From the IMG/VR virus record IMGVR_UViG_3300033997_000243, positions 186,001 to 250,000 of that record: DNA of 64,000 bases; one strand, given 5' to 3'. The stretch's first letter is position 1. The number at the start of each line of letters is the position of its first letter. Under the pieces are notes generated by a model that saw nothing but the letters and a program-made list of their open reading frames with translations, did no database searches and was not told the origin of the DNA. Shown piece by piece: positions 34,324 to 53,545 of the stretch. The translations under genes were made by a program, and so were the position numbers.

Positions 34324-34545
34324 ATGCCAAAGGCAGTTGTTTTGAGAGTCAGGGACGTTAAAAACGTCCTTGATCCTTTTCATATAAAGAATTTTCATTT
34401 AGGTGGCTGGCGTGTTCGTCATGAAAACAAATGGATCAGAATGGTTCCAGAAAATACTCTGATTAAAAATCCAGATCATGATCCGGCTGTACACGCACCA
34501 GATGATACTGAATTTCCGTTATATACACAGGTGGTATCAGAATGA
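34324..34545 (+). CDS. small virion-associated protein (start MPKAV)
   Basis: GGGAG SD; R..N.W pattern like the N-terminus of 26910. Confidence 0.55.
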   Translation: MPKAVVLRVRDVKNVLDPFHIKNFHLGGWRVRHENKWIRMVPENTLIKNPDHDPAVHAPDDTEFPLYTQVVSE

Positions 34546-39277: not shown

Positions 39278-40972
39278 ATGTCTAAACAATATGGTTCTTT
39301 AACTTTTATGGGCCAAGGCCAAATCAAAAATTTCACACCTGAGAAACTGGTAGCTGATCCAGCTGGCGCAGGTTTGTGGGAAGGTCGTGTATGGACAAAC
39401 ACAACTGACAATGTTATTCGCTTTTATTTAGATGGCGAAGTAAAACAATTTGCCGAAGGTGGTTCACTGGACGATTATTTACGTCGTGACGGTTCACTGG
39501 CAATGTTAGGTGCTTTGCTGTTAGACAGCGATGATCAAAGTGCTGCTACTGATTTAACTGCAATCAGTAAAGGTCACTTAGATACTCAATTAGCTACCAA
39601 ACAAAACACTATCACTGGTGCTGCCACTTCAATCACTACCGCTGATTTAACTGCTGAGCGTGTTGCTGTTTCTGATGCTTCAGGTAAAGTTGCAGTTTCT
39701 ACTGTAACAACTACTGAATTAGGTTATGTTGGTGGCGTTACTGGCCCAATCCAAACTCAATTGGATGGAAAACAAGCTGATTTAGGCTTCACTCCAGTAA
39801 ACCGTGCTGGCGACAGCATGACTGGTCAGTTAGCAATGAACGACAATCGCATTAGTGGTGTTGGTGCGCCGTTGAATGCAACTGATGTCGCTCGTAAAAT
39901 CGATTTAGAAACTGCCATTGCAAATCTGAACTGGCAAGATGATGTGTTAGCAATTCAAGTTGATAACACATTAGTTCCACAGACTGTTGAAGGTGCTCGC
40001 TATATCGTTACTGATGTTGCGAATCTGAATGCAGGTTTCGGAACTATCGCTGGTGTTGGTGACAACGACATCGTTGAATATATGGATGGATCTTTCGTAG
40101 TTGCCTACGATATTTCTACAGCTGGTGCAAATGCCGCTGGTACTTTTGCTACCAACTTAGATGATGGTTCATTCTATCGTTACAACGGCGCTTGGGCACG
40201 TTTTGAAGGTGTCGATTCAATCGTTGCGGGTATCGGTTTAGTTCGTAGCGGAAATACTTTCAACGTAAACATGGGTGCTGGTATTTCTCAGTTACCTACT
40301 GATGAAGTTGGTATTGATGTTCGCGCTAACAGCGGTTTATTCTTAACTGTTGATGGTTCAACTGCTTCTACTGATACTTCTGCTGCTTTAGCTGTTTTAT
40401 TACAGTCTGCTGGTGGTTTAAGTTTCGGTGTCGATGGTGGCGTACAAATCGCTTCGCAAGGCGTTACTGCTGCAATGTTAGGTGCAGTTGTTGGTAACGG
40501 TTTAGCTGGTGGTAACGGTGTTGCGATTTCTGTTACTGCTGGTGATGGTATCACTGTTGATGGTTCTGGTGTAAGTGTTGACGAAACTTTCTTAGATGGT
40601 CTGTATGCACGTTTAGATGGTGCGGATTTCACTGGTGCTGTTACAGTTCAAGCTCCGACTGTTGATGCAAACCCTGCTCGTAAACTGGATCTGGATAACT
40701 TAGATACAGAATTAAGTGGCGCAATCAACGATGTGAACACGCGCATTTCTGCTGGTTACTTCGTTTATGATGGTACTGCAACAGCTGCTTCTACCCACAC
40801 TGTAACACACGGTATGGGCCAGAAATATGTCGGTGTAACTGTTGTAGATGAATTCGACAACGTAGTTGGTGTTGACGAAATTACTTTCGTTGATGCAAAC
40901 AGCTTTACTGTTGACGTAATTCCTGCAAGTAAAATCCGTGTTATCGCTGTCGGTGCTGCACCTTTAATTTAA
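39278..40972 (+). CDS. abundant fibre/whisker-like structural protein
   Basis: GD.MTG.L and G.GL repeats; strong GGT/GCT/TTA codon bias; C-terminal HGMG domain. Confidence 0.7.
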   Translation: MSKQYGSLTFMGQGQIKNFTPEKLVADPAGAGLWEGRVWTNTTDNVIRFYLDGEVKQFAEGGSLDDYLRRDGSLAMLGALLLDSDDQSAATDLTAISKGHLDTQLATKQNTITGAATSITTADLTAERVAVSDASGKVAVSTVTTTELGYVGGVTGPIQTQLDGKQADLGFTPVNRAGDSMTGQLAMNDNRISGVGAPLNATDVARKIDLETAIANLNWQDDVLAIQVDNTLVPQTVEGARYIVTDVANLNAGFGTIAGVGDNDIVEYMDGSFVVAYDISTAGANAAGTFATNLDDGSFYRYNGAWARFEGVDSIVAGIGLVRSGNTFNVNMGAGISQLPTDEVGIDVRANSGLFLTVDGSTASTDTSAALAVLLQSAGGLSFGVDGGVQIASQGVTAAMLGAVVGNGLAGGNGVAISVTAGDGITVDGSGVSVDETFLDGLYARLDGADFTGAVTVQAPTVDANPARKLDLDNLDTELSGAINDVNTRISAGYFVYDGTATAASTHTVTHGMGQKYVGVTVVDEFDNVVGVDEITFVDANSFTVDVIPASKIRVIAVGAAPLI

Positions 40973-40989
40973 TTTTTACGGCTAATAAC

Positions 40990-41022
40990 AATTGGGGCGG
41001 CATTTGACTGCCCCAATTTTTT
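40990..41022 (+). terminator. intrinsic terminator
   Basis: AATTGGGGCGG...CTGCCCCAATT followed by TTTT. Confidence 0.75.
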
Positions 41023-41047
41023 ATCATTTTCTTTAATGAGGAAACCT

Positions 41048-41656
41048 ATGAAAGTCTTAGGTAGAACAAACTTCATGGGAAACGCCGTAAAAAATTTGGC
41101 CTTTAGTGCTGACGACGATGGTGTCGAATTTGCAGGTGAAGGTCGAATAGTGCGTGTCCAAGGTCGTCTGCTTATGGGTGTAACTATTGTTGATGGTCAA
41201 ACAACTTCTTTAGGTTGGGTGCAACTTCTGCAAGAGAAAAATACTTATACGCACGAACAACAAACTCCATCGACAGTTTGGACAGTGCAACACAATATGA
41301 ACAGTACACGTTTAATTGTGCAGCCTTGGCCGGATGGTGAAGTTGCTACAGCGCAAGAAATTATTACATTAGATGCTGACACAGTTCAGATTACATTTAA
41401 CGTAGCAGTTTCTGGTGTTGCAACAATTATGGTTGGTAACATTGATGGTTTAGCTAAACCAGATATTCGTTATGAGCAACCGTTCACCAGTCAAACAACT
41501 GTTACGGTAAATCACAACTTAGGTTATGATCCAGCAATTCGCGTTCTGAACGCTTACGGAATGGAAATTTTGAATTACGAATTATCCAGTCCTTCAGTGA
41601 ATCAAAGTGTGCTGACGTTTACAACTTCTTCAACTGGAACAGTTTACTGTTTATAA
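41048..41656 (+). CDS. virion protein with two HNxG domains
   Basis: THEQ.TPS..W...HNM and VNHNLG; start by GAGGA SD. Confidence 0.7.
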   Translation: MKVLGRTNFMGNAVKNLAFSADDDGVEFAGEGRIVRVQGRLLMGVTIVDGQTTSLGWVQLLQEKNTYTHEQQTPSTVWTVQHNMNSTRLIVQPWPDGEVATAQEIITLDADTVQITFNVAVSGVATIMVGNIDGLAKPDIRYEQPFTSQTTVTVNHNLGYDPAIRVLNAYGMEILNYELSSPSVNQSVLTFTTSSTGTVYCL

Positions 41657-41666
41657 GGAGTAAGTT

Positions 41667-41897
41667 ATGGCATCAGTTCGTTTGGTAGGTCAAGGTGGCT
41701 ATACTCACACGCAACAAACTCCAAGTACAATGTGGTTGGTTGAGCACAATTTAGGTCGTGTTCCATTGTTGGAAGTGTTTGTAAATCACCAAGGCATTCT
41801 GCAAAAAATTCAGCCAAAATCTATAGAGCAACAATCTGGTAATATTACCAAGATTCATTTCTCTGTTCCGATGACTGGCAATGTTCGCGCATTGTAG
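41667..41897 (+). CDS. stand-alone HNLG-domain virion protein
   Basis: YTHTQQTPSTMWLVEHNLG. Confidence 0.7.
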   Translation: MASVRLVGQGGYTHTQQTPSTMWLVEHNLGRVPLLEVFVNHQGILQKIQPKSIEQQSGNITKIHFSVPMTGNVRAL

Positions 41898-41907
41898 GAG
41901 AAATTAA

Positions 41908-42456
41908 ATGTTATTAGATGGCGCTTCTTTGCTTGATGGAAGTACGCTGGAAATTTCACCTGTTGAAGAAGGTGCAAGTTTTCCAGCGTCACCAACTGAC
42001 GGCAAACGCTTTAAGAAAACTGGAACAGGTGCAGGCAATTATGTGTACTCCGCATTTTTGTCAACTTGGATTCTGGTAACAAACGTAGCCTTTAACAGCT
42101 ATGATATTAGTTCGAGCATTTTTGATCGTCCACGTAGCAGTGATGTTGTGGTCAGACATTTAGCAGCAAGAACTTTTTATCTAAAGGCTGGATTGGCTGG
42201 ATGTTCTGCAAGAGCAAACGTAGCTGCAACAGCACAAACAGTATTTACTATTAATGCTGTTCGTAGTGGCGTAACAACTCAAATAGGAACCTTAACTTTT
42301 GCAGCTGGTGCAACTGTTGGTGTTTATGCGAGTTTAGCTGGTGCAAACTCTATTATCTTTGGTGTAGGTGATGAATTAACGATTGTAGCTCCGGCCACTC
42401 GTGATACAACACTGTCAACAATTGCTATTACAATGGCAGGACTTTTATTCGTCTGA
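41908..42456 (+). CDS. virion fibre-associated protein
   Basis: FP.SP.DG motif; beta-sandwich ending GD.L.I.AP...D.TL. Confidence 0.6.
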   Translation: MLLDGASLLDGSTLEISPVEEGASFPASPTDGKRFKKTGTGAGNYVYSAFLSTWILVTNVAFNSYDISSSIFDRPRSSDVVVRHLAARTFYLKAGLAGCSARANVAATAQTVFTINAVRSGVTTQIGTLTFAAGATVGVYASLAGANSIIFGVGDELTIVAPATRDTTLSTIAITMAGLLFV

Positions 42457-42463
42457 GGTTAGT

Positions 42464-43384
42464 ATGGATCTTATACAGTGGGAAAAGTCAGCACTTACAA
42501 ATTTGACGGGTAACACAAATGGAAATACTGATTGGCTATTTGGCTACCTAAATACAGCGCAGACGGACTTGCTGCTAGAAGATCCTGTCTCGCTTTCTTC
42601 TTTTGAATTCATGTCACAAAATTGTATTGCAAGTAGATTAATTAGCTTGCGTAATATATATCCAGCGGTAAATCCTTACGCTGATTTAATTTTTGCAGAT
42701 AGCGGAAGATTATTTCACCACAGAGGTACGCTGGATATTTCAGGTTCAAACTTAAGACGCGCAATACCAACTCGTATTTATTTTGAAGGTGTAACTGATT
42801 CGCAATGGAATGCTACACTTACCCCGTTTTATACCCCAACACTTCTGGCCGGAATTTCTCGATTACAGCGAGTTAGTATTCCGATCACTGCTTTTGTTAT
42901 CTACGAATTTCAGAACCCAACAACTATAAAGAATATTGCTTACGCTCACTTTGCAGGAAGTGCGGCAAACTCAAGACCTTTAGGTCTTTCAGTTCAATAC
43001 AAAGTTGGCGATCAATGGTTTTCTGCTGATACCATTACTTTAACAGATGCCAACACGAACATAGTAAATAAAGTCTTTGATATTCCTGAATGTACTGCAA
43101 TTAAAATAGGCACTATAAATTCAGGAAGTAAAATAGGTTGGCAATTTAGTTATCTGACATTTGAGACAGATTCCGATTATATATTGGAGGAGACAGTTGA
43201 ATCTTTAATTGTCTGCCCTATGCCTATAGCTGGACACACTTCACCTGCAACTTGGGAACCGAGCAGCGTAAGAATATTTTCTTATGATTTAAGTGAAATC
43301 AAATTGAATACACTTCAAACAAATCGTTTCATTGAAATGAATTTGATTGCGGGTCGTATGGAAGCAAGGGCCACATTAACATGA
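42464..43384 (+). CDS. array member, long type (discoidin-like insert)
   Basis: start MDLIQ by GAGG SD; YEF..P..I...L.VQY..G..W pattern. Confidence 0.55.
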   Translation: MDLIQWEKSALTNLTGNTNGNTDWLFGYLNTAQTDLLLEDPVSLSSFEFMSQNCIASRLISLRNIYPAVNPYADLIFADSGRLFHHRGTLDISGSNLRRAIPTRIYFEGVTDSQWNATLTPFYTPTLLAGISRLQRVSIPITAFVIYEFQNPTTIKNIAYAHFAGSAANSRPLGLSVQYKVGDQWFSADTITLTDANTNIVNKVFDIPECTAIKIGTINSGSKIGWQFSYLTFETDSDYILEETVESLIVCPMPIAGHTSPATWEPSSVRIFSYDLSEIKLNTLQTNRFIEMNLIAGRMEARATLT

Positions 43385-43887
43385 AAATGAATAAAGCCGC
43401 TGCTAGTTTATTGTACCAAAGAAATTTGGGCACTACTGCTTTAAGGTATCACATAATTTTTGTTCGTGGTAATACACACACGACGACAGAGTTAGATACA
43501 CTGTTCAATGCAACAAACGGAATCTTTACCAATATAGCAACCTTGATAACTCAGATAGGTTCGCGTGGCGGTGCTGTGTTAGCACAAGCAGAATTAATAA
43601 CAACGCAAAATCCAGCAATGAAAGCAAACTTTCCTAGCTTATTAGATTTTGATTGGAGTAAAGTAGCGCCAACTGTTATGGTTTCAGGTCAACCTGATTG
43701 GTTTTTGATTTATCCAAGAACAACAAACGTAGCTTACAATGCTAATGGTGCGTCAAACTTTTTAATACGTGGCAGCATAACAGATTTTTCAGGTGACGGT
43801 GATTTGCGTGTTGGAAATCGCAACATGACAGTTGGTGAAATTTATGAAATGACAAACTGCAAAATAAGGCAGGTAGGTCATGAATAA
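43381..43887 (+). CDS. array member, short scaffold type
   Basis: MKMNKA start; G.PDWF; GSI.D..G.GDL. Confidence 0.6.
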   Translation: MKMNKAAASLLYQRNLGTTALRYHIIFVRGNTHTTTELDTLFNATNGIFTNIATLITQIGSRGGAVLAQAELITTQNPAMKANFPSLLDFDWSKVAPTVMVSGQPDWFLIYPRTTNVAYNANGASNFLIRGSITDFSGDGDLRVGNRNMTVGEIYEMTNCKIRQVGHE

Positions 43888-44272
43888 TTTAATCAAAGAC
43901 GTCAATTATTTTGACAAAAATTTCGATCAGAATAAATTTGTGTTTTTTCCAAAACAAGTCACTTGGGATCTATCTTTAAACGGCACTAATGTAATTCAAG
44001 GTAACAACCCTCAAGTTGATTATGTGCCGACGCCAGAAATAGTAAATTTAATTCATCCTGTTATAAATGCTGGATTAATTTACTCGGCTGGATTGCCAAG
44101 TATTTCTATTTTTGTACAACCTCAGTTCATTGATATGCCTTTTGTGGCTACGCAGCTTAACTCGAATGTTGTATTTCAAACGTATACAGCCATCATAAAT
44201 TTTGAAGCAACTACATTGCCAACTTTAAATGTAATGAATGCTGCTTTCTTTACACTTCAGATAGGGGTATGA
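43880..44272 (+). CDS. array member, type C (paralogue of 48316)
   Basis: YF...FD...FP..VT.D. Confidence 0.5.
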   Translation: MNNLIKDVNYFDKNFDQNKFVFFPKQVTWDLSLNGTNVIQGNNPQVDYVPTPEIVNLIHPVINAGLIYSAGLPSISIFVQPQFIDMPFVATQLNSNVVFQTYTAIINFEATTLPTLNVMNAAFFTLQIGV

Positions 44273-44273
44273 A

Positions 44274-45266
44274 ATGAAAACTTTTGGAATGAATCCAACT
44301 TTAGTTGAATCATTTAAGAACATTATGCCAACAAGGAATCTTGCGTATTTCTTTGATGGCACAATGCCAGCGGATTTTAATTCATTAGGTTTTCCGCAAA
44401 CAGCAGCAGGTTTAATTGAAAACTGTAAGAACGCTTGTGTCATTACAAGCTACTTCACAGACAACCGCAACGTGAATTTTGTGAATGCAGGATCATTAAT
44501 AAAGTCTGGCGATTTGGTTGCTGTATATCGCGGTGAAGTTGTGTCAGTTAAAGACGGAGCAAGTAATCCAACAGCTTTTGATGATCATTTGATTTATTAT
44601 CCAAGAAAAATCACCTGCAAAAATGACTACAGAGATCACAACACTTTTATGTCTGTCATGTATAAAATGCAAGGTGATTATGGTTTTGACGGATTAGATA
44701 CTTTCATTGCGCGTACAACAGAAAATGATGAAACTATCGAATTTGAATACGATACACCAAGAGCAGTAAACTGTTTTGGTATCAAGCAAAGCACAACAGC
44801 CGCGCAAGTAATGTATCAATTTCACATTGAATATTGGAATGGATCTGCTTGGACATTGATTGATACAAGTCCAATAAATCAAATTGGCTATTGGATAGTT
44901 AAATTTGCTGAGATAACGGCTACTCGTTTCAGAATCCGTAAAGTAAGTACAACTGGGACAGCCGCGAATATAGATTTAGCTTTCGCTTATTTTGGTAAGT
45001 TTGGATTCAGTGCCGGTGACATTCGTAAAAACGTAGCTGTTCCACAATACGCCATTATTGTTCCAGAGCATATTAGTGCGGCTACCTACACAAACTTGTT
45101 ATCAAAACAAAACGACACTTATGGAAACCGTAATCAAAATACTGAACATCTTATAATGTGCAGTGCAGGTCTGCCAAGCCAAAGCGTTTACATGAAAATG
45201 AACGCACCTACAACAGACGAATACAACAAATACAACTACTATTTAGTAGTTGGGCAGATTATATAA
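44274..45266 (+). CDS. array member, long type with F5/8 type C (discoidin)-like domain
   Basis: FDGTMP; IEFEYDTP..VN...IEYWNGSAW...ITATRFRI. Confidence 0.65.
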   Translation: MKTFGMNPTLVESFKNIMPTRNLAYFFDGTMPADFNSLGFPQTAAGLIENCKNACVITSYFTDNRNVNFVNAGSLIKSGDLVAVYRGEVVSVKDGASNPTAFDDHLIYYPRKITCKNDYRDHNTFMSVMYKMQGDYGFDGLDTFIARTTENDETIEFEYDTPRAVNCFGIKQSTTAAQVMYQFHIEYWNGSAWTLIDTSPINQIGYWIVKFAEITATRFRIRKVSTTGTAANIDLAFAYFGKFGFSAGDIRKNVAVPQYAIIVPEHISAATYTNLLSKQNDTYGNRNQNTEHLIMCSAGLPSQSVYMKMNAPTTDEYNKYNYYLVVGQII

Positions 45267-45275
45267 GGCGGCCTT

Positions 45276-46409
45276 ATGTTGAATGCAGGATTAAACGATA
45301 CTGTATTTAGATCTATCGAGAACAATATTACAATTGAAGGGTTGTCCATATCAAACACGGTTTATCTATTCAGTGGAGATCCTCCAATAGATATAAGTGA
45401 TATGATGCTTACATTGACTGGGAATTTGGATGTAGATACTTCTTATTTAGTTAATAGGGCTGACGCTATATTAGATCTTGATTTTTCGGTAACACGAGAT
45501 TCTACATCTATAAAATTTAATATAGCAAATGGATTTTTTGGAAATTATTTTGAAAAATTTTTAGCATATAAAGGTAAGCCTGACTTAAATGTTTATGATA
45601 CTGGATTAGCGGCTTACAGAAATCTTGGAGACTGTATAGTATATTACGCAAACAGTATAGCTTCAAACTATTCAGTAAGTTCAGGACTGCCTTCAGTAAC
45701 CATACCCACAAGACAGTCTCCTAATGTGAGAAATGATACTCATATAGAAAATTCTGCATTCTCAGGCAAATATCTAAGAGGCAGATATAACATTAGCAGT
45801 TGGTATTTCTATATGGGCCGCAGAGCCAATAATAAAAATGCCAGTGGTCAAGACTTGCCAACTAATAACCATCGTGGTCATGGTATGGTCATATTCGATT
45901 CTCCCATTGAGGCTGATTTTATTATGTTCAGCCTTGTGCATGATGGAACGACTATATATAATACCAACTTATCTAGTCTCAGTCTTATACTTGAAGATAA
46001 TACTTTTGTTGAACTTCCAGTATTTGGCGTCAGTCCGTCAGGAATCATATATTTAGTTCCATTTGCGAAAAGAACTATAAAGGGCGTGAGAATGGCAAAT
46101 GCCTACCAGCCTATAAATACTTCTACTCAAACTTTCTGTAACTACTATTGTCCGATTTTTACTGTAGGTCTTTCTGAATACCAGACAACAGATTTGGCAA
46201 ATCCAACAAGAGATATTATAACTCATGCACTTGTAGTGCCGACCTTAAATCCTGTAAGACAATCTCAAGCTACAAAGAGTCAACCTTTGATGTTGCTTAG
46301 TGTGGGAAATGAGGAAAGTTCAGCAGAACTTAAAGTTCAAGCACCTGATAGTATGTACATATCTTCTAGCAGTGTTGTAGATAAAACACTAATGGAATTG
46401 CCAAAATAA
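45276..46409 (+). CDS. array member, long type (close paralogue of 51719)
   Basis: MLNAGLND, LFSG.PP, R.LGDC, H...FD.P..ADF. Confidence 0.65.
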   Translation: MLNAGLNDTVFRSIENNITIEGLSISNTVYLFSGDPPIDISDMMLTLTGNLDVDTSYLVNRADAILDLDFSVTRDSTSIKFNIANGFFGNYFEKFLAYKGKPDLNVYDTGLAAYRNLGDCIVYYANSIASNYSVSSGLPSVTIPTRQSPNVRNDTHIENSAFSGKYLRGRYNISSWYFYMGRRANNKNASGQDLPTNNHRGHGMVIFDSPIEADFIMFSLVHDGTTIYNTNLSSLSLILEDNTFVELPVFGVSPSGIIYLVPFAKRTIKGVRMANAYQPINTSTQTFCNYYCPIFTVGLSEYQTTDLANPTRDIITHALVVPTLNPVRQSQATKSQPLMLLSVGNEESSAELKVQAPDSMYISSSSVVDKTLMELPK

Positions 46410-46492
46410 ACTGGGTTTAAAGTTTTGAATAAATAAGTTATTATCATCCAAGTAGATAAGATCTTAATAATCAAACAATTTTGGAAATAAAC

Positions 46493-47059
46493 ATGAAAAT
46501 TAATAAAGCTTTTGCTGATCAGATGCTACTTATCTATGGGCAGAATTATGCAGCCACAACTTTGACTCAAACTTCAGGAGTTATATTTAGTTTGTGGAGT
46601 GGGGCAGAACTTTCTCAGACTGAAATGAATGTCATTCGTGACACATTCACAGACGCAAATGGAATTATTGCAGGTAATTGGCCAGCTACTTTAATGGGGC
46701 CAAATGGAAGAGTTGAATTGGCACGTTTATACGTACCAACTTTCTCGCAAAGATCGGATAATAGCGAACCTAATGCTCTAAGAAAAAAATTTGAACTATC
46801 AAAAATAACAAGTTTAATGACTATTCTTGCGGCGGGTAACGCAGGATCATTTACATTATCCATAACAGGATCTAGTTGGACTGGATGGACATCTGCCGCA
46901 GCAAACTCTAGCCGTGTTATATATAATGGTTCAGTAGGAAATTTAGAAAGTAATGCTGATATTAAGTTTCCTACAACTTCAATAGCTTTGGATAGTAAAA
47001 TTAAACCTACCGACATAAATTTCCAATTTAATTTCCCAAGTTTAGAAATGATTTGGTAA
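46493..47059 (+). CDS. array member, short scaffold type
   Basis: start MKINKA; SLWSG; GSVG...S.ADI. Confidence 0.6.
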   Translation: MKINKAFADQMLLIYGQNYAATTLTQTSGVIFSLWSGAELSQTEMNVIRDTFTDANGIIAGNWPATLMGPNGRVELARLYVPTFSQRSDNSEPNALRKKFELSKITSLMTILAAGNAGSFTLSITGSSWTGWTSAAANSSRVIYNGSVGNLESNADIKFPTTSIALDSKIKPTDINFQFNFPSLEMIW

Positions 47060-47074
47060 TAGAGGCGACACACA

Positions 47075-47602
47075 ATGAAAATGAATACTGGTGCTTTATT
47101 AGCAAGTACATATGCTTTGCACAGAAACGATCTTGCAAATACTACGGCTGTTTCAGTTAGTTTGTTTACTGGTGGCCCATTAACTCAAGCCGAAGAAGAT
47201 TATATAAACAGTGCTACTGTTACAGCAGCTTCAACAGGTTTGATTAGTCACAGTTTAGCCAGAACAAATTTAATTTCAACACGTACTGAACTTGGTCAAC
47301 TGTTTTTACCTACTTTCACTCAGAAGAAAATAGGTGGGAATGTACATGAACGCATTTGGATGTTCACACAACGCACAGAAGAAATGACTGGATTAGCTAA
47401 TGGAGATCCAACACTTGCAATGATTTCACTTCATGGTGGTGCAGCTGTTTATACAGCTGGAAACATTTGCAGAATGTTAATGTTGTGTTCAGTAGGTAAC
47501 GTAGGTTCAGGTGCTGAATTTGAACACAATGGCCCAATAGTAACTGGACAGCGTTACAAAATAAACGACTTCAAGTTTACCATTCAAAACTTGTTAGGTT
47601 AA
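47075..47602 (+). CDS. array member, short scaffold type
   Basis: SLFTGG; ELG.L.LPTF.Q shared with 46493; SVG..GSGAE. Confidence 0.6.
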   Translation: MKMNTGALLASTYALHRNDLANTTAVSVSLFTGGPLTQAEEDYINSATVTAASTGLISHSLARTNLISTRTELGQLFLPTFTQKKIGGNVHERIWMFTQRTEEMTGLANGDPTLAMISLHGGAAVYTAGNICRMLMLCSVGNVGSGAEFEHNGPIVTGQRYKINDFKFTIQNLLG

Positions 47603-47606
47603 GTTT

Positions 47607-48242
47607 ATGGGAAATGTTTATACTCATAATCATGGAACGGAACCTAAAGTCGTTCAAGTATACAAGCCATTTTTCAACAATAGCTTAGCTAACGGCCCAT
47701 TACGTCAATTTATTTCCTACCCACAATCAAGCGCACCTACTGCACGAATAGGTCAGTTTGATGGATATGAGTGGGGATATAACACAGACGGATCGCAGTA
47801 CGGAATAGTGCGATTTAATGGAGTAGCAGTCCCAAATCAAGCTGAAACTTTTGCTATGTTGCAATCAAAATATTCGATTGGTGTAAATCAAAATATTAAT
47901 ACCAATCCGATATTTTATTCAGTTTACGCAAAGACTGATCTGGAAGATCCAATAGAGAGTGTTGTATGCGAATATAATGCTTCCAACCACAAAGTATTTT
48001 CATATTCAAATGGAACAAGAACTTGGTCAGCCACTATAGATGGAATAACTTATGGATGGCGCAGCTATTCTAACATAGAAGGTGCGGCTGGCTACTTGAA
48101 TGATTTTACGATTAACGGTCAAGGCTCTGCTAATATTGCAGTGCGAGATTATATTTTAAATTTATGCACTGTAGGTTCAGTTGTTCAATCTGGTGAGCCA
48201 ATAAGAAGTGCCGTCTGCGTTAAAACGTATTCGGTATCTTAA
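47607..48242 (+). CDS. hypothetical aromatic-rich protein with an internal duplication
   Basis: A.I..FDGYEWGY and ATIDGITYGW repeats. Confidence 0.55.
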   Translation: MGNVYTHNHGTEPKVVQVYKPFFNNSLANGPLRQFISYPQSSAPTARIGQFDGYEWGYNTDGSQYGIVRFNGVAVPNQAETFAMLQSKYSIGVNQNINTNPIFYSVYAKTDLEDPIESVVCEYNASNHKVFSYSNGTRTWSATIDGITYGWRSYSNIEGAAGYLNDFTINGQGSANIAVRDYILNLCTVGSVVQSGEPIRSAVCVKTYSVS

Positions 48243-48315
48243 ATAACGATAACGGATTAAAATAAAACTGGGAAAATGAAACGCAGTATGTTCTGCATTT
48301 AATAGGAGACATCTG

Positions 48316-48777
48316 ATGCCTAGTGTATATGTCGCGGCATACTATGCAAACAGATTTGATCCAGATACATTGTTTCCTGAAACGGTCACGATTGATGGCG
48401 ATCAAGTTTTTTTGTCAGACGGAAATCCTTCATTGGCACAAAGAGGTCAGTACAATATAGATCAAAGCTTTTTAAGTTTCTTGAGTCTAACTTATCTGAA
48501 CATGCCAGAAGTATTTTTCGATCAAGTAGCGACTACAGTTGAACGACCTTTAGTTCCACAAGCAAGTTCATACTTGTTAAGTAGTTCAATAAATGAATTG
48601 CAAATACCATACACTGTAGTAGAAGTTAAATCAAATTTTGGACAAGTATTTGTACAGAATTCTCTGCATACAGTTAGTGTGTTATTGCCTCAAGATCCTG
48701 ATTTAGATTTTAATGCTACTGCATTTGTGCAGTACAATCTGATGAATGAATCTACATTAACCTCAACTTTGATATAA
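48316..48777 (+). CDS. array member, type C (paralogue of 43880)
   Basis: YY.NRFD...LFP.TVT.D. Confidence 0.5.
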   Translation: MPSVYVAAYYANRFDPDTLFPETVTIDGDQVFLSDGNPSLAQRGQYNIDQSFLSFLSLTYLNMPEVFFDQVATTVERPLVPQASSYLLSSSINELQIPYTVVEVKSNFGQVFVQNSLHTVSVLLPQDPDLDFNATAFVQYNLMNESTLTSTLI

Positions 48778-48787
48778 GGGCGCAGTT

Positions 48788-49738
48788 ATGTATTTTGCAG
48801 CAGAAAATGCGAATATGGTAAGTATGCAAGCGCAAGCTGGCACACAATGGAATCTTTTTCTGATGACTGGTGATGTTCCAACTTCAGTAAATGAAGTTCA
48901 TACAGAAATCGGCTTGTCAGATATGAAAGGCATTTATGCAAATGCCATTGCAGGTTTACGTTTACTGTCTGTAAACAGCACAACATACGGAACAGAATTA
49001 GTTGCATTTGAAAACGTAGCTCAACTTTTCACACTTAAAATGCACGGTGCAAGATCTACTAATGGTCTGGCTGGCATTCAACTGTTACCACAATCTATTG
49101 ATTCAAACATTCAAGGACTGGAAAAACCAGCTGGTTTTGTGAATGGATTAGAATCTATGGCACTGGCTCCAGCAACAGCCACAACTCATATAACAACTGA
49201 TGGTTGGATTGAATATGATTTTGGTGATGCTGTTAGTGTGAACCGTGTTGTATACGGAAATTTTGTTACTACCACAAGAAATCCAAGCACAATGGCGATT
49301 GAATATTTGAACGGAAGTGCTTGGGTTGTAGCAGCCACAGGCATCGCTGTTAAAACGTACAATGCCGCTGGTATTGAATCAACTTTTGCTCCAATAAGTG
49401 CGCGTCGTTGGAGAGTTCGTTTTCTGGATAACACCGGAACTGTTGCAGCAAATACATTAGTGTATAACTATATTCGCTTCTTTGCTTCGGCAGTACCAAG
49501 TAATGTAATGTCAAAAGAAAATATTCCTGTAACCTGGGGTATTTTAGTTCCGGCAGCTCCAGTAGCTTCTATCTACGAAAGTTTGTTTGCTCAACGTGTA
49601 CCCGCATTTATTTTTACATTAGGTGGGCCAGCTGACGGTGGCGTGGGTTTATTAAACCGCAGTAGCGGAACAATCGAAGATATTTTTAGTGTTATCAGTC
49701 TTAAACTTAAAACTGCTGTAGTCACGGAGGTAGCATAA
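48788..49738 (+). CDS. array member, long type with F5/8 type C (discoidin)-like domain
   Basis: LMTG.VP; WIEYDFG..V.V...IEY.NGSAW...ISARRWRV. Confidence 0.7.
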   Translation: MYFAAENANMVSMQAQAGTQWNLFLMTGDVPTSVNEVHTEIGLSDMKGIYANAIAGLRLLSVNSTTYGTELVAFENVAQLFTLKMHGARSTNGLAGIQLLPQSIDSNIQGLEKPAGFVNGLESMALAPATATTHITTDGWIEYDFGDAVSVNRVVYGNFVTTTRNPSTMAIEYLNGSAWVVAATGIAVKTYNAAGIESTFAPISARRWRVRFLDNTGTVAANTLVYNYIRFFASAVPSNVMSKENIPVTWGILVPAAPVASIYESLFAQRVPAFIFTLGGPADGGVGLLNRSSGTIEDIFSVISLKLKTAVVTEVA

Positions 49739-50274
49739 TGTTATTAGCAACTGATGCGATGATTCCACTGTTGAATCAATCACCAATTTTAGGTGTAACA
49801 AACCGCAAAATGCTTACTCTGTATGATGGCACCATGCCAACAAAAGAAGATTTGGAAGCTGCTTTATATTCCACTACTTCAGGATCAGGTATTGCAAGTA
49901 CAACTCGCGGTTTGTATCGTCAAGATCTTATTCACAATCTTGCACTTGCAAAAGGCGGGATATTACGTGGTTACGTAAACTATCCAACAAACTTTGCACT
50001 TCAAATGCAAGGTGCAAACAAATTGCGCTTTCCATTATCCGAACGTCCAGAAGAATTGATTAAGTCTGCGATTGGTAACGTAACTTATTTTATTCTGGCA
50101 GTTGTTGCCAGTACAGTTGTTGCCCCAACAACTAACGGTGCAGTTCACTGGGTAGGTATTGGTACTGTTGGTGCGGCTGGAAGTGGGGCTGATATGATTT
50201 TGTTCGGCGGCGCAATTGATAATACACGCGCAGTTAAAATGAATGATCAAATATTCACTTTTGACGGAGTATAA
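49738..50274 (+). CDS. array member, short scaffold type
   Basis: LYDGTMPT; GTVG..GSGADM. Confidence 0.6.
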   Translation: MLLATDAMIPLLNQSPILGVTNRKMLTLYDGTMPTKEDLEAALYSTTSGSGIASTTRGLYRQDLIHNLALAKGGILRGYVNYPTNFALQMQGANKLRFPLSERPEELIKSAIGNVTYFILAVVASTVVAPTTNGAVHWVGIGTVGAAGSGADMILFGGAIDNTRAVKMNDQIFTFDGV

Positions 50275-50276
50275 CC

Positions 50277-51185
50277 ATGATATTCCATTCAGGAGTTAAC
50301 GCACCCAATAGTATTCAAGACTATTTCGGTGCTTCTGGATGGCATTCATTTTTCTTTTCGGCAGCGGATTTGGGTTTAACTCTTCCAGTTAGTTTTGAGG
50401 AATTGACGGAAGAGTTTTTAAAATTCAATCCGCACGATGTAGATGCGTTGATTAATAACTGTCGAGCAGTATCATTACTGACCTCAAGTGTTGTTAATGG
50501 AAACTTGGTATATAATCACGCATCTTCATTAATTCCTATGAGAAAAATGGGGCCAGATGTTTCCAATCCAAGATACGGCAATGATCCCCTTTATCAAGGC
50601 CGCATTTTAAATGTTTGGAGTACAGGAGACAGAACTCAATTTACTTTTGCTGAGAAATGTGCGCTACTTGGTAGACAATCAACTTATGTGACTTTTGCTC
50701 AAACAGCATTAGGTCATAAAATAGAATTAGACTGTTCCGCGCAAAAGATAAATTTTATTGACATGGATTTTGGTTCTGTTGTTCCAAACTTCAATATCAA
50801 AACCGTGGCTAATGGAGTAGAGCTTGAACACGTTGTTACTAAAGTAGCGAACAATCGTTTCATGTTCAATAACACAAGAACAGATGTAACTAAAGTTATT
50901 ATCGAGTTTACAGCCGGACAACCAGCTTTTGATCTAAAATCTATTAAGATCATGACAGATAATATTAATGGACATTCAGCAGTATCAATTAATTTTGCTC
51001 TGTTACGTCCAGTAAGTGTAACCGGCAGTTTATTACCAGTAGGTGCAGATTATCCTTTCATGGTAATATCTTCTGGTGGAACAAATGCAACAACGGAAAT
51101 GCGTTTAGACATAGGAACAAAGCAATCTGGCGAAGATGTTGTTGTAATGCACTGTCAAATTCGTCCTCAAGTAGTGGAGATTTAA
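50277..51185 (+). CDS. array member, long type
   Basis: MIFHSG.N start; beta-sandwich insert; G......E.RL end. Confidence 0.55.
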   Translation: MIFHSGVNAPNSIQDYFGASGWHSFFFSAADLGLTLPVSFEELTEEFLKFNPHDVDALINNCRAVSLLTSSVVNGNLVYNHASSLIPMRKMGPDVSNPRYGNDPLYQGRILNVWSTGDRTQFTFAEKCALLGRQSTYVTFAQTALGHKIELDCSAQKINFIDMDFGSVVPNFNIKTVANGVELEHVVTKVANNRFMFNNTRTDVTKVIIEFTAGQPAFDLKSIKIMTDNINGHSAVSINFALLRPVSVTGSLLPVGADYPFMVISSGGTNATTEMRLDIGTKQSGEDVVVMHCQIRPQVVEI

Positions 51186-51187
51186 TT

Positions 51188-51679
51188 ATGATTGGATTAT
51201 CCACTAGCATGAAAGCTTTACTTGGAGCCAAGTACGAACAAACAGCTGTAGCTAAAAAAGTAATGTGGGTTATGGGAGGCACTATGCCAACTCAAGCTCA
51301 AATTGCTGCATTAGTTCAGGCTGATGGTTCAATAAGTAGTAACGCATTAAAAGCATTAGGTACTTTAAGATTAAGTGTTACATATCCAGCCACTGTTGTT
51401 CCATTACGTACCGGAATAAACCTAGTAAGTTGGTTATTAAGTCAACGCGGTGAAACTTTCACAGTTAACTCACCTGGTGCTGCCGATTGGTTTGTTTTTA
51501 TGTATGTGCAAACTAACATCAACGAACCGAACTACACAACAGACGCCAAGATTTATCAATGTTTCATCGGTAAAGTTGGTGACATAGGTGAAACTGGAGT
51601 CGATATGGAATTATTAGGTTCAATGATTGAATCTGATAAACTATATAAAACTACAGACTTTGAAATTAAATCTATATAA
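51188..51679 (+). CDS. array member, short scaffold type
   Basis: MGGTMPT; G.ADWF; GKVGD...G.DM. Confidence 0.6.
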   Translation: MIGLSTSMKALLGAKYEQTAVAKKVMWVMGGTMPTQAQIAALVQADGSISSNALKALGTLRLSVTYPATVVPLRTGINLVSWLLSQRGETFTVNSPGAADWFVFMYVQTNINEPNYTTDAKIYQCFIGKVGDIGETGVDMELLGSMIESDKLYKTTDFEIKSI

Positions 51680-51685
51680 GTATTT

Positions 51686-51699
51686 GGGGCTTCGGCCCC
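51686..51699 (+). terminator. C(UUCG)G hairpin
   Basis: GGGGC-TTCG-GCCCC with no clear U-tract. Confidence 0.45.
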
Positions 51700-51718
51700 T
51701 CTACTTAAGGAAAAATTT

Positions 51719-52849
51719 ATGCTGACCGCAGGATTAAATGAAAACTTAGTAAGAACATTAATTAACACTGCAACAATTAATTCCATAACACATCAAAGTG
51801 TTTTGTATATGTTTAGCGGTTCAGTTCCACCAAGTCTTGAATCATTAGATTTGAATGTAGGTTCCTTGACAGAAAATCTCAAGTCGCTACTTCAAAGCGC
51901 CGATGGTGTATGTTTTCCAAATATAGCTCTGGATAAATCAGATGGTTTGAAAATAAAGGCAAATATATCAAGCGGTGATTTTGGTGGAATAAGAGAAAAG
52001 ATTGGGACAAAGAAAGGAGCTTATATTCCAGATATTTCACAACAAGTATTTGATCTTAATACTTCTGGAAATAGAGCTTTAGGTGATTGTGTCTTATATA
52101 GATTAAATAATGCTTGGGCAGATTGGCAAGCTGGAACGGGCTTGCCTGCACTCGTTATTCCTCCTGTGTTACCTCCACTGGATTCAGTAAATTCATTATT
52201 GCAGATGACTGGAATAAATTGTCAATCGGGTCAAAAAATACGTACATTTGAACAATTGGATTCTTATGGAACTTATTTAGGCCGTAGAGGATCTACAACA
52301 GCAGGTGTTACTAACGATAGCCACAGAGCACACACTGCTATAGTGTTTGATGAACCAGTTCAAGCGGATTTTCTTTTATTCAGAATGCTTTGCCAAAATA
52401 ACGTGGCTACAAGAACTTTTTCAAACGTATCTTTAATTTTGCCAAATAATTCGATAGTGGAATTGCCTACATTCACGGCAACACAAAATATAAGTTACGT
52501 ACTCAACTTTACAAAAACTTTGATAAAGGGTTTACGTTTGGCAACAACACATCAAACTTTTAGTTCAACCCAAGCCAGATTCTATGCAACTTACTTTACG
52601 GCAGGTCTTAAAGATTGGGAATTAGAATCTGACTTAAGTGATAACACGAGAAATCCTTTTACTTGGGGTATTTTAGTGCCAACACCAGATCCAACTGCTT
52701 CGGCCTTAACCGAAAGAAAATTACCTTTAGCCTTGGTTACAATAGGTGATCCAGCAAGCGGCGCTGATATAGAATTCAATGGAAGATCTGAACATTATAT
52801 CAGACCAAATTGCATTGTAAACAAACAATTGTTTGAACTTAATTTATAA
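51719..52849 (+). CDS. array member, long type (close paralogue of 45276)
   Basis: MLTAGLNE, MFSG.VPP, RALGDC, H...FDEP..ADF, IG...SGADI. Confidence 0.65.
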   Translation: MLTAGLNENLVRTLINTATINSITHQSVLYMFSGSVPPSLESLDLNVGSLTENLKSLLQSADGVCFPNIALDKSDGLKIKANISSGDFGGIREKIGTKKGAYIPDISQQVFDLNTSGNRALGDCVLYRLNNAWADWQAGTGLPALVIPPVLPPLDSVNSLLQMTGINCQSGQKIRTFEQLDSYGTYLGRRGSTTAGVTNDSHRAHTAIVFDEPVQADFLLFRMLCQNNVATRTFSNVSLILPNNSIVELPTFTATQNISYVLNFTKTLIKGLRLATTHQTFSSTQARFYATYFTAGLKDWELESDLSDNTRNPFTWGILVPTPDPTASALTERKLPLALVTIGDPASGADIEFNGRSEHYIRPNCIVNKQLFELNL

Positions 52850-52863
52850 CATAAGGAAATAAA

Positions 52864-53211
52864 ATGGAGCAAGTAACAGCAACTCAACTACTTGGCCCAC
52901 TGATGAAATATTCATGGGATTATCTTATCTTAGCCTACGCATTTACTTTGCTTGGTGTAGCAATACACTGGGTTAAAAAATGTGTGCAGGATAAACTGGA
53001 CTTTGTGAAATACTGGACTTGCAACAAGCAAAGCAGTATTTTAGTTGTCTTAACTACAACAGCTGGTTATTTTACCACGCTTATCATTGATCCGAATCCA
53101 AATTTAATGACGTTTATTGGTATTAGTTATATGGCCGATAGCATATTAAACAGGGACGGTGGCCCAAAGGTGAATCCAAATGTCAGAACTCCAGACGAAC
53201 CAAGTTATTGA
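52864..53211 (+). CDS. putative holin
   Basis: small protein with 2-3 TM helices and a charged C-tail at the head of the lysis cluster. Confidence 0.6.
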   Translation: MEQVTATQLLGPLMKYSWDYLILAYAFTLLGVAIHWVKKCVQDKLDFVKYWTCNKQSSILVVLTTTAGYFTTLIIDPNPNLMTFIGISYMADSILNRDGGPKVNPNVRTPDEPSY

Positions 53212-53542
53212 AGTTAAAGAAGTGTGGTATAAAAAGTGGGGTAAGTATATTCTTATGGGATTACTTGCTATACTTACACTGGGCGCGTATGCTTATGCAG
53301 CGCGTTCAAAAAACCCTACGGCTACAACTGATAAACTTGATGAAATCGACAGAGATATTATTGAGGATAAAATTGTTGATGCGAATGCTGTAGGAAAAGA
53401 AATAGAGGCAGAGCAATCCGATATGCAACAAATTAAGGTTGCTGGTCAAGATGCTTTTGATTCTGTTGCAGATCAAGCAGTTAATAAAACCGATGATCAA
53501 AAGATTGCGGATTTTAATGCAAGTATGAAAAAACGGAGATAG
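53180..53542 (+). CDS. putative inner-membrane spanin (i-spanin)
   Basis: basic N-terminus, one TM, helical periplasmic part. Confidence 0.55.
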   Translation: MSELQTNQVIEVKEVWYKKWGKYILMGLLAILTLGAYAYAARSKNPTATTDKLDEIDRDIIEDKIVDANAVGKEIEAEQSDMQQIKVAGQDAFDSVADQAVNKTDDQKIADFNASMKKRR

Positions 53543-53545
53543 TCA

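What the first reader, a model, noticed from the sequence alone, without database searches (positions are those of the whole stretch)
42464..52849. 10-kb array of about 13 paralogues: bare scaffolds alternating with scaffolds carrying discoidin-like inserts
Seen: five short proteins (43381, 46493, 47075, 49738, 51188) mostly share (L/F)..G..P near the N-end and G.VG..(G/S).A(D/E) near the C-end. Six long ones (42464, 44274, 45276, 48788, 50277, 51719) mostly keep similar ends around a beta-sandwich, clearest as F5/8C in 44274 and 48788. Two type-C genes (43880, 48316) recur with them. Inference: a combinatorial glycan-binding appendage built from hetero-oligomers and expanded by duplication to broaden host range.
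Basis: partly seen in the sequence, partly recalled or inferred. Interest (0 to 1): 0.65.

Follow-up and report, generated by a model that had tools for sequence, protein, structure and literature searches.

The report
Lectin-loaded garland-protein gene array, jumbo phage
A 319-kb phage carries a 10-kb row of 14 genes, 11 of them diverged copies of a small tail-baseplate "garland/arm-segment" protein and six of those with a sugar-binding-type domain inserted mid-chain; it is probably a multi-lectin adhesive network at the tail tip, and nobody has described it.

Summary
Window 42464-52849 has 14 tightly packed + strand genes in the late baseplate/tail-fibre module of a 319.5-kb jumbo phage.

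- **Short genes.** Five (163-188 aa) form one family, phrog_17152. The model of 49738 (pLDDT 90) best matches the virion "garland" protein gp014 of Agrobacterium phage 7-7-1 (Z 9.8). It matches A511 gp105 and a phage 812 baseplate chain more weakly (Z about 5). Intermediate sequences link the family to gp014's family, phrog_3758.
- **Long genes.** Four of six carry the same N- and C-ends split by an insert, shown by an excision test. 50277 joins through profile comparison. 42464 shares only the central domain.
- **The insert.** In the model of 51719 it has a CBM32/discoidin fold (Z 9.6).
- **Other genes.** The two "type-C" genes are not detectably related to each other.

The array recurs in Erwinia phages Yoloswag and Y3, in phage NCTB and in metagenomic relatives, everywhere unannotated. 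Its content varies: 45276 is present or absent between co-occurring strains.

Most likely function: paralogous dimers strung on a baseplate scaffold that display lectin domains for host glycan binding. Presence in the virion, dimer formation and sugar binding are inferred, not shown.

The parts
42464..43384 (+). Long member 'LC' (306 aa). Probably has a discoidin-like central domain; scaffold ends not detected.
   Evidence: Orthologues at 85% (L003) and 43-45% (L017, L019). Family hhalign to the 48788 family is 62% and to the 44274 family 46%, central region only. The excision test gave 5.2 bits, within the control range. The ESM Atlas model is low-confidence and resembles F5/8C clusters over residues ~92-238; this is a lead only.
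43381..43887 (+). Short scaffold member (168 aa); its start overlaps the stop of 42464 by 4 nt.
   Evidence: The four-member short profile finds it at E 5.6e-5 over full length. The deep HMM gives 3e-36. Its orthologue clade has bootstrap 100.
43880..44272 (+). Small gene 'C1' (130 aa); not a member of the family; function open.
   Evidence: No Pfam or PHROG hit. No hhalign match at 10% or more to any array family. It is the most diverged gene against L003, at 47%.
44274..45266 (+). Long member 'LB1' (330 aa): split scaffold with a discoidin-like centre.
   Evidence: BLAST to 48788 gives 2e-7. Family hhalign to the 45276/51719 family is 97% over full length. Excision test 14.8 bits against a control maximum of 7.8.
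45276..46409 (+). Long member 'LA' (377 aa); a strain-variable copy.
   Evidence: 31% identical to 51719, E 7e-61. Excision test 21.7 bits. Absent from close relative L003. A contig of a co-occurring strain joins 45262 to 46492 and so lacks the gene.
46493..47059 (+). Short scaffold member (188 aa). In relatives, members of the same orthologue clade carry C-terminal lectin domains.
   Evidence: phrog_17152 at 2e-6. L017_11088 and L020_9001 fall in the same clade and carry Laminin_G_3 or F5/8C C-terminal domains. A diverged patch at 46766-46994 differs between strains.
47075..47602 (+). Short scaffold member (175 aa).
   Evidence: phrog_17152 at 1e-5. BLAST to 46493 gives 3e-9.
47607..48242 (+).
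   Evidence: No family hit. Only 42% identical to its L003 counterpart. In a wastewater variant, 1357 different letters stand in its place. Its C-terminal half has a paralogue at genome positions 115387-115716(-).
48316..48777 (+). Small gene 'C2' (153 aa); not a family member and not detectably related to 43880.
   Evidence: hhalign C1 against C2 gives 4%. Orthologues exist in L003, L005 and L020.
48788..49738 (+). Long member 'LB2' (316 aa): split scaffold with an F5/8C-like centre.
   Evidence: Pfam F5_F8_type_C_2 at E 1.2e-5, 26.3 bits against a cutoff of 27.8. Its C-end matches the C-end of 51719 at 4e-5. Excision test 15.3 bits.
49738..50274 (+). Short scaffold member (178 aa), the one folded. 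Its ATG overlaps the stop of 48788.
   Evidence: AF2 model with pLDDT 90 and pTM 0.85. Best solved match is 9rkv_A, which is 7-7-1 gp014: Z 9.8, 132 of 139 residues aligned. A511 gp105 (6hhk_A) gives Z 5.0 and 812 baseplate chain 9euj_H gives Z 4.9.
50277..51185 (+). Long member 'LD' (302 aa).
   Evidence: Family hhalign to the 48788 family is 95% over full length, and to the short family's C-end 75%. The direct excision test is not significant at 5.9 bits. The ESM Atlas gives an F5/8C-like lead only.
51188..51679 (+). Short scaffold member (163 aa).
   Evidence: phrog_17152 at 4e-4. BLAST to 49738 gives 7e-12.
51719..52849 (+). Long member 'LA' (376 aa), the one folded: scaffold N part, inserted CBM32/discoidin-like domain at about 120-303, scaffold C part.
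   Evidence: AF2 model with pLDDT 75.8. VIA gives Z 9.6-8.1 to 24 CBM32, F-lectin and F5/8C chains over residues 120-303. Foldseek gives 22 hits at E <= 1e-3. Split HMM match. Excision test 34.5 bits.
39278..42456 (+). Conserved four-gene set (564, 206, 76 and 182 aa) that precedes the array in most relatives. Context only.
   Evidence: 39278 hits phrog_16122 'virion structural protein' at 1e-114. The C-end of 41908 matches tail-fibre family phrog_7049. The same gene order is seen in L003, L017, L019, L020, L021, Yoloswag and Y3.
40990..41018 (+). Strong intrinsic-terminator-like hairpin (11 pairs plus a T run). Probably the 5' boundary of the transcription unit that holds the array.
   Evidence: No comparable + strand terminator lies inside the array.
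16127..20782 (+). 1551-aa tail protein in the T4 gp7 / arm-scaffold position. Candidate 'string' for the dimers; this is inference only.
   Evidence: Gene order is gp25-like 14215 (Pfam E 2e-5, below threshold), then gp6-like 14664 (phrog_219, 2e-51), then this gene (phrog_14098 'tail protein').

Best explanation
The array encodes 11 diverged paralogues of a small beta-rich virion protein. That protein belongs to the garland / arm-segment / tail-fibre-network connector class: 7-7-1 gp014, Milano gp125 and gp127, A511 gp105, phage 812 gp118 and T4 gp8.

Five paralogues are the bare ~170-aa module. Six have a ~180-aa discoidin/CBM32-like lectin domain inserted between the N-terminal and C-terminal parts of the module.

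By analogy with solved virions, the modules would form homo- or heterodimers. These dimers would be strung by beta-strand addition onto extended linkers of a large baseplate or fibre protein, or would wrap the distal ends of the fibres. The result would be a peripheral network at the tail tip that displays many different lectin domains and binds host surface polysaccharide by avidity.

Gene loss and gain, cassette replacement and uneven divergence retune the set between strains.

Shown here: paralogy, split-scaffold topology, fold assignments, position in the late tail module, conservation across the lineage, and strain variation.

Inferred: presence in the virion, dimer formation, threading on a scaffold, sugar binding, and any effect on host range.
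For: Scaffold fold.
- The model of 49738 (pLDDT 90) has 7-7-1 gp014 (9rkv_A) as a clear top match: Z 9.8, 132 of 139 residues aligned, Foldseek probability 1.00.
- The next matches are phage tail, neck and baseplate chains, including A511 gp105 (Z 5.0) and an 812 baseplate chain of 172 aa (Z 4.9).

Sequence bridge to the garland family.
- gp014 and its paralogue gp012 are phrog_3758 (E 1e-35 and below).
- Intermediates from the short-family search hit both families. P0135 gives phrog_17152 at 1e-10 and phrog_3758 at 8e-8; P0143 also hits both.
- The G.VG..S.A motif aligns between the short family and gp014.
- PDB chain 44nx_B, 'Structural protein', matches the short-family profile at E 6e-4.

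What is published about this fold.
- Milano gp125/gp127 were fitted as homo- or heterodimers, with a fold like T4 gp8 and A511 gp105 (PMC10811340).
- Six dimers of the 812 arm-segment protein are strung on linkers of the arm scaffold and carry the receptor-binding proteins (PMC13433997).

Split scaffold.

Insert fold: and Pfam.

The same scaffold joined to lectins in other ways.
- N-terminal short domain plus two Laminin_G_3 domains (P0014, P0016, P0022) or plus F5/8C (P0034, P0037).
- Array members of relatives carry above-threshold F5/8C (43.9 and 33.2 bits) and Ig-like repeats.

Context.
- The array lies at the end of a + strand baseplate/tail-fibre module and before a lysis-like gene set.
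- It is tightly packed and follows a strong terminator.
- Three long-short gene pairs have overlapping or near-overlapping stop and start codons.

Conservation and turnover.
Against: - There is no proteomic or structural evidence that any array protein is in a virion. All homologues in isolated phages are annotated 'hypothetical'.
- Matches to A511 gp105 and the 812 chain are only Z about 5, a range the tool itself calls common. T4 gp8 did not appear in any list.
- Direct hhalign of the short family against gp014 gives only 5.5% probability.
- The complex prediction for 48788 with 49738 gave no verdict.
- The model of 51719 is of moderate confidence (pLDDT 75.8; the other four models scored 56-63). 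I could not superpose its scaffold part on the short model, so the exact insertion point rests on secondary-structure order and profile matches.
- 42464 shows no scaffold ends, and 50277 shows them only by transitive evidence.
- Between the window and L003, divergence in 51719 is higher in the N-terminal 120 residues than in the lectin domain. That does not fit a simple picture in which the lectin tip evolves fastest.
- No sugar-binding residues were examined.
Confidence: 0.58

Rival explanations
1. The array proteins build the curly 'hairs' along the tail, or the unclear structures at the tail base, that define this second lineage of 'hairy Myoviridae'. They would do so by polymerising as beads on a string into flexible lectin-studded filaments, not into a compact baseplate garland.
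For: - The array is present in Y3 and Yoloswag, and Dickeya phage JA13 has proteins of the short-family fold. Y3 and the JA phages are described as hairy, and Yoloswag groups with them.
- A511 gp105-type dimers form beads-on-a-string filaments in crystals (PMC10811340).
Against: - No localisation data exist.
- PaBG, a member of the same lineage, has no detectable phrog_17152 gene. Whether PaBG is hairy could not be established.
- All solved homologues sit at the baseplate or fibre ends, not along the sheath.
Confidence: 0.15
2. The proteins are not virion components. The short ones would be assembly chaperones or adaptors for the neighbouring long ones, as with tail-fibre and Tfa/gp38 pairs, or the whole set would act inside the cell or be released at lysis.
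For: - Long and short genes alternate with overlapping stop and start codons at 42464/43381 and 48788/49738, and with a 2-nt gap at 50277/51188.
- No virion proteomics exist.
- The Pfam and PHROG entries concerned carry no functional name.
Against: - Short and long proteins share the same scaffold, so they are paralogues and not an enzyme-chaperone pair.
- The scaffold's closest solved relative is a protein modelled in a virion.
- phrog_3758 is annotated 'virion structural protein'.
- The short domain is itself fused to lectin domains in relatives.
Confidence: 0.12
3. They are decoration proteins of the neck, collar or head, in the manner of Hoc or whiskers, and not of the baseplate.
For: - Second-tier fold matches are to neck and connector chains: Sf14 neck 9c39_K at Z 6.2 and Bas63 connector 9mt4_I at Z 5.9.
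- Lectin and Ig-like domains are common on capsid decorations.
Against: - The top match by a clear margin is the garland protein at the fibre tips (Z 9.8).
Confidence: 0.08

Closest known systems
Garland proteins of Agrobacterium phages 7-7-1 (gp014, PDB 9RKV chain A; paralogue gp012; phrog_3758) and Milano (gp125/gp127)
   Same: - Small size and fold: Z 9.8, with nearly the whole chain aligned.
- A shared C-terminal G.VG..S.A motif.
- Sequence intermediates that hit both PHROG families.
- Genes lie next to tail-fibre genes.
- Two paralogues per phage, proposed for Milano to form homo- or heterodimers.
   Different: - Those phages have one or two bare paralogues of ~140 aa. This phage has 11 (163-377 aa) in one array.
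- Six of the 11 carry an inserted lectin-type domain.
- Direct sequence similarity is not significant (hhalign 5.5%).
- Virion location is unknown here.
Arm-segment / BW3-TFN connector proteins: phage 812 gp118, A511 gp105 (PDB 6HHK), T4 gp8
   Same: - Overall fold over the full length (Z about 5).
- These proteins form dimers that are threaded on linkers of a gp7-like scaffold and hold the receptor-binding proteins.
- The window has a gp25-like, gp6-like, then very large protein gene order that could supply such a scaffold.
   Different: - The structural match is weak, and T4 gp8 was not recovered.
- In those phages a single protein species is used in many copies.
- Their gene lies next to the scaffold gene. 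Here the array is ~22 kb downstream of the candidate scaffold.
F5/8 type C (discoidin) / CBM32 / F-type lectin domains
   Same: - The fold of residues 120-303 of the 51719 model (Z 9.6-8.1 to 24 chains).
- Near-threshold Pfam hits in 48788.
- Above-threshold hits in array members of relatives.
   Different: - The domain is inserted inside another domain, not appended.
- Sequence is very diverged, and most members have no Pfam hit.
- Ligand-binding residues and the calcium site were not examined.
Branched multi-receptor-binding-protein systems of large myoviruses (CBA120 tailspikes; Rak2-like phiKp24 hyperbranched fibres)
   Same: Many different receptor-binding modules are encoded in a row and mounted on one baseplate to widen recognition. 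This comparison rests on general knowledge and on citations within PMC12796354.
   Different: Those systems use large trimeric tailspikes or fibres with depolymerase domains, docked through dedicated adaptor domains. This one uses small dimer-type modules with lectin inserts and no enzymatic domain.

Membership tests
Garland / arm-segment (T4 gp8-like) virion protein class | Shared three-dimensional fold | tested here: met
   The model of 49738 matches 9rkv_A (7-7-1 gp014) at Z 9.8, rmsd 4.0, 132 of 139 residues; 6hhk_A (A511 gp105) at Z 5.0, 119 of 172; and 9euj_H (812 baseplate) at Z 4.9. T4 gp8 was not listed.
Garland / arm-segment (T4 gp8-like) virion protein class | Detectable sequence homology to a family member | tested here: inconclusive
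   Direct hhalign against gp014 gives 5.5% probability, E 0.007, with the motif aligned. Indirectly, P0135 and P0143 hit both phrog_17152 and phrog_3758 at 1e-5 to 1e-10. PDB 44nx_B 'Structural protein' matches at E 6e-4.
Garland / arm-segment (T4 gp8-like) virion protein class | Forms homo- or heterodimers | tested here: inconclusive
   Complex prediction on 48788 with 49738 gave no verdict. Homodimers were not tested.
Garland / arm-segment (T4 gp8-like) virion protein class | Located in the virion at the baseplate periphery or fibre tips | not testable with these tools
   Only gene context is available: the end of the baseplate/tail-fibre module.
phrog_17152 | Profile match | tested here: met
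   49738 at 7e-13, 46493 at 2e-6, 47075 at 1e-5 and 51188 at 4e-4. 43381 matches only through my own family profiles.
F5/8 type C / CBM32 (galactose-binding-domain-like) | Pfam gathering threshold | tested here: not met
   In the window the best hit is 48788 at 26.3 bits against 27.8 (PF22633) and 22.5 against 28.2 (PF00754). The other five long proteins have no hit. The threshold is met in relatives' array members: L020_9001 at 43.9 bits and L021_4501 at 33.2 bits.
F5/8 type C / CBM32 (galactose-binding-domain-like) | Beta-sandwich fold of the family | tested here: met
   Model of 51719, residues 120-303: Z 9.6 (5xnr_A, 8hgg_C), 9.4 (7blg_A), 9.3 (1k12_A); 24 chains at Z >= 8. Foldseek gives 22 hits at E <= 1e-3. 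This was tested for one protein only.
F5/8 type C / CBM32 (galactose-binding-domain-like) | Carbohydrate-binding site residues or bound calcium | not tested
   No coordinates were available to inspect, and no ligand-site analysis was done.
Tail-fibre assembly chaperones (considered for the short genes) | Similarity to known chaperone families | tested here: not met
   No Pfam or PHROG chaperone family hits any array gene. The only 'tail assembly chaperone' label (phrog_1158/DUF1353) belongs to 53546, which lies outside the array.

The most novel reading that the evidence does not exclude
The array is the long-sought genetic basis of the 'hairs', or of the undefined tail-base structures, of the Y3/Yoloswag/JA lineage of hairy jumbo myoviruses. 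Paralogous gp8-like dimers, half of them with inserted lectins, would polymerise on an extended string into flexible, combinatorially variable adhesive filaments. That would be a new kind of modular phage adhesin, built from connector proteins and not from trimeric fibres.
Probability: 0.15. Interest if true: 0.8.

Novelty: new variant of a known kind. Interest (0 to 1): 0.62.

Why it matters
Garland and arm-segment proteins have so far been seen as one or two plain structural connectors per phage.

- **A new role for the fold.** An 11-member array in which the connector fold itself hosts inserted or appended lectin domains would make the connector network a host-recognition surface in its own right.
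- **Annotation.** It would give about 10 kb of "hypothetical" genes a testable role in a whole lineage of jumbo phages. That lineage includes isolated Erwinia and Dickeya phages studied for biocontrol.
- **Open questions it could address.** It offers concrete candidates for the unknown "hair" or tail-base structures. It may also explain why host range in these phages does not track the annotated tail fibres: JA11 and JA13 have identical fibres but different host ranges (PMC6143709).
- **Evolution.** Strain-level gain, loss and replacement of array genes suggest that this is where host adaptation happens.

Tried and rejected
- **Complex prediction.** Complex prediction on 48788 with 49738 (neighbouring long and short genes with their own alignments) scored 0.00 twice and returned 'no answer'. 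It is not evidence either way.
- **DNA search.** megablast of the array against 50,697 phage records found nothing. tblastn of 49738 against phages found nothing at 1e-3, although NCTB does hold ~28%-identical homologues. The failure was one of sensitivity.
- **Word-based protein search.** It found only 3-6 relatives of the 376-aa family. The profile search of representatives was far richer for the short family, with 234 clusters.
- **Pfam on 29 long proteins** from the window and relatives: only 3 show F5/8C.
- **ESM Atlas look-ups of 50277 and 42464.** The Atlas's own models are poor (pLDDT 0.46-0.50) and feature scores are below 0.9. The F5/8C-like and 'SU10 adaptor' rows are leads only. 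The Atlas shape search with the 51719 model gave TM below 0.4.
- **'Type-C' paralogy of 43880 and 48316** is rejected at the sequence level.
- **Fast-evolving lectin tips.** The per-block identity profile between the window and L003 does not show divergence concentrated in the lectin domain, so I make no such claim.
- **Literature.** I found no virion proteome or description of this array.
- **Chain identity.** Whether chain b of 9EUF (Z 5.7) is the arm-segment protein could not be confirmed. Chain 9euj_H is 172 aa, close to A511 gp105's chain (172 aa), but it was not verified either.

Full report
**Setting.** The window is bases 186001-250000 of a single 319,518-bp virus contig with direct terminal repeats, so the source is a jumbo phage.
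- No close DNA relative exists among 50,697 phage records.
- By protein, the nearest named relatives are phage NCTB (51% identity on the 564-aa virion protein 39278-40972), Pseudomonas phage PaBG, and many Erwinia and Dickeya jumbo phages.
- Day et al. place Y3, Yoloswag, the JA phages and PaBG in a second lineage of 'hairy Myoviridae' and say the hair proteins 'remain unknown' (PMC6143709).
- The DNA occurs in subsurface metagenomes, with partial matches in wastewater and drinking-water runs.

**Gene context.** The + strand block from 14.2 to 54 kb is a baseplate/tail-fibre module.
- It opens with gp25-like 14215 (Pfam E 2e-5, below threshold), gp6-like 14664 (phrog_219, 2e-51) and a 1551-aa tail protein.
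- Collagen-like tail-fibre proteins and the 564-aa virion protein follow.
- A strong terminator-like hairpin lies at 40990-41018. After it come three conserved small genes (206, 76 and 182 aa; the last has a tail-fibre-like C-end), then the array.
- After the array come two membrane proteins, a DUF1353 protein and a lipoprotein.

**The observation.** Between 42464 and 52849 there are 14 + strand genes. Gaps are -8 to +15 nt except for three of 39-83 nt.

**The short family.** The five short proteins are one family.
- Pairwise E-values reach 7e-12.
- A four-member profile finds the fifth at 5.6e-5 over full length.
- Four of the five hit phrog_17152.
- A profile search of 1.84 billion representative proteins found 234 clusters at E <= 1e-3, nearly all 160-190 aa.

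**The long proteins.** They form a connected set.
- 45276~51719: E 7e-61.
- 44274~48788: E 2e-7.
- With orthologues added, hhalign gives the 44274 family against the 45276/51719 family 97% over full length. It gives the 48788 family against the 50277 family 95% over full length, and the 44274 family against the 48788 family 97%.
- The 42464 family joins only through the central region (62% and 46%).

**Do short and long share ends?**
- The deep short-family HMM matches 51719 and its kin as two collinear pieces, residues ~3-47 and ~288-356.
- Half-profiles give E 1e-7 to 1e-10.
- hhalign of the short family against the C-end of the 45276/51719 family gives 86%, and against the C-end of the 50277 family 75%.
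- As a control test I removed internal segments in silico (locally only) and scored what remained against the short-family HMM. Scores were 51719 at 34.5 bits, 45276 at 21.7, 48788 at 15.3 and 44274 at 14.8. The best of 49 similar-length ORFs from the same genome scored 7.8. 50277 (5.9) and 42464 (5.2) did not pass.
- So the split scaffold is shown directly for four long genes, is transitive for a fifth, and is not shown for 42464.
- No further family member lies elsewhere in the genome.
- The two 'type-C' genes and 47607 match nothing, including each other.

**What the scaffold is.**
- The AlphaFold2 model of 49738, built on 125 sequences, has pLDDT 90.
- Its best solved match stands well clear of the rest: 9rkv_A at Z 9.8, with 132 of 139 residues aligned and Foldseek probability 1.00.
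- I confirmed that this chain is gp014 of Agrobacterium phage 7-7-1. [quoted passage not shown]
- A second look also lists A511 gp105 (Z 5.0) and a 172-aa chain of the phage 812 baseplate (Z 4.9), both aligned over their full length.
- The Milano paper states that garland proteins gp125/gp127 fit the map as homo- or heterodimers and share the fold of T4 gp8 and A511 gp105 (PMC10811340).
- At sequence level, gp014 and gp012 are phrog_3758, and intermediates from my search hit both phrog_17152 and phrog_3758. A PDB 'Structural protein' (44nx_B) matches the short profile at 6e-4 with the motif aligned.
- Direct hhalign against gp014 is weak at 5.5%.

**What the insert is.**
- The model of 51719 (11 sequences, pLDDT 75.8) has a CBM32 / F5-8C / F-type-lectin beta-sandwich at residues 120-303. 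VIA gives Z 9.6-8.1 to 24 chains, and Foldseek gives 22 hits at E <= 1e-3.
- The flanking parts repeat the secondary-structure order of the short model. This places the insertion roughly between short-protein residues 100 and 115. That is an inference, because coordinates could not be superposed.
- Pfam sees F5/8C only in 48788 and just below threshold.
- ESM Atlas leads for 42464 and 50277 point the same way but are weak.

**The same scaffold meets lectins in other ways.**
- Some proteins have an N-terminal short domain plus two Laminin_G_3 domains, or plus F5/8C.
- Array members of relatives carry above-threshold F5/8C and Ig-like repeats.
- In the tree of short domains, the bare 46493 sits in one clade with lectin-fused forms from L017 and L020.

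**Distribution and turnover.**
- The array follows the same conserved four-gene set in metagenomic relatives L003, L017, L019, L020 (a 286-kb contig) and L021, and in Erwinia phages Yoloswag (gp84-gp70) and Y3 (Y3_093-079). L005, whose contig begins inside the array, has the same kinds of genes.
- NCTB has the array at another genomic site. PaBG has no detectable member.
- All these genes are annotated 'hypothetical'.
- Each of the window's five short paralogues has its own orthologue clade with bootstrap 99-100, so the duplications are old.
- Content differs between phages. L003 lacks 45276, and L005 has five copies of the 376-aa type.
- A co-occurring strain in the same study joins 45262 to 46492, which removes 45276. 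In a wastewater variant, 1357 other letters stand in place of 47607.
- Against L003, identity ranges from 43-47% (47607, 43880) through 66-68% (50277, 51719, 46493) to 91-96% (four of the short genes).

**Interpretation.**
- Most likely (about 0.58), the array encodes virion proteins of the garland/arm-segment kind that dimerise and assemble on an extended scaffold at the tail tip. They would present many diverged lectin domains for multivalent binding of host surface glycans.
- The 1551-aa protein in the gp7 position is a candidate scaffold. The non-family small genes are candidate linkers, by analogy with Milano gp126. Both points are speculation.
- The rivals are tail 'hairs' (0.15), non-virion chaperones or adaptors (0.12), and neck or head decoration (0.08).
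- The single complex prediction gave no verdict and counts for nothing.

**Novelty.** The fold class and discoidin domains in jumbo phages are both known (PMC7824862). I found no description of a multi-paralogue array of this connector fold, or of lectin domains inserted into it. I therefore rate it a new variant of a known kind.

Noticed in passing
It is the least conserved slot of the array, and a wastewater variant has a different 1357-nt insert in its place.
   Followed up: partly
window 39278-40972 (C-end), 41036-41656 (two copies), 41667-41897, 35834-36748: A ~55-60-aa domain (phrog_21918/28944/30556; also hit by the probably mislabelled 'HNH endonuclease' phrog_24148) recurs in several genes just upstream of the array. 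In NCTB a 138-aa protein with this domain heads the relocated array. It may be a docking or adaptor repeat.
   Followed up: partly
window 30312-34226: The 1304-aa protein has Calx-beta (39 bits) and, at its C-end, HINT/intein-like signals (PT-HINT 27.1 bits, just below threshold; Hom_end_hint). The NCTB homologue is annotated 'large intein domain protein'.
   Followed up: no
window 52864-54516: A lysis-like gene set follows directly after the array: two small membrane proteins (115 and 120 aa), DUF1353 (58.9 bits) and an ORF with an internal lipoprotein signal (…LFGC…). Yoloswag and Y3 have a membrane protein and a lipoprotein at the same place.
   Followed up: no
window 44000-49999, as seen in run X3: Two strains coexist in one subsurface sample. 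The window's type has depth ~79. A more abundant variant (~180-250) lacks 45276 and differs at 47607 and in a patch of 46493 (46806-46994).
   Followed up: partly
L016 10001-11083 (metagenomic relative): In one relative a single 360-aa member of the 45276/51719 family sits far from the usual site. It lies next to RNase H and thymidylate synthase genes, opposite the start of the baseplate module, so array members can relocate.
   Followed up: no
window 23202-24725 and 34542-35315: Two proteins share a collagen-like/tail-fibre segment (phrog_8745, 5073, 1806). These are probably the conventional fibres of this phage.
   Followed up: no
window 46615-47073 (-): A 152-aa antisense ORF lies wholly within 46493-47059. 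It has no support and is most likely spurious.
   Followed up: no
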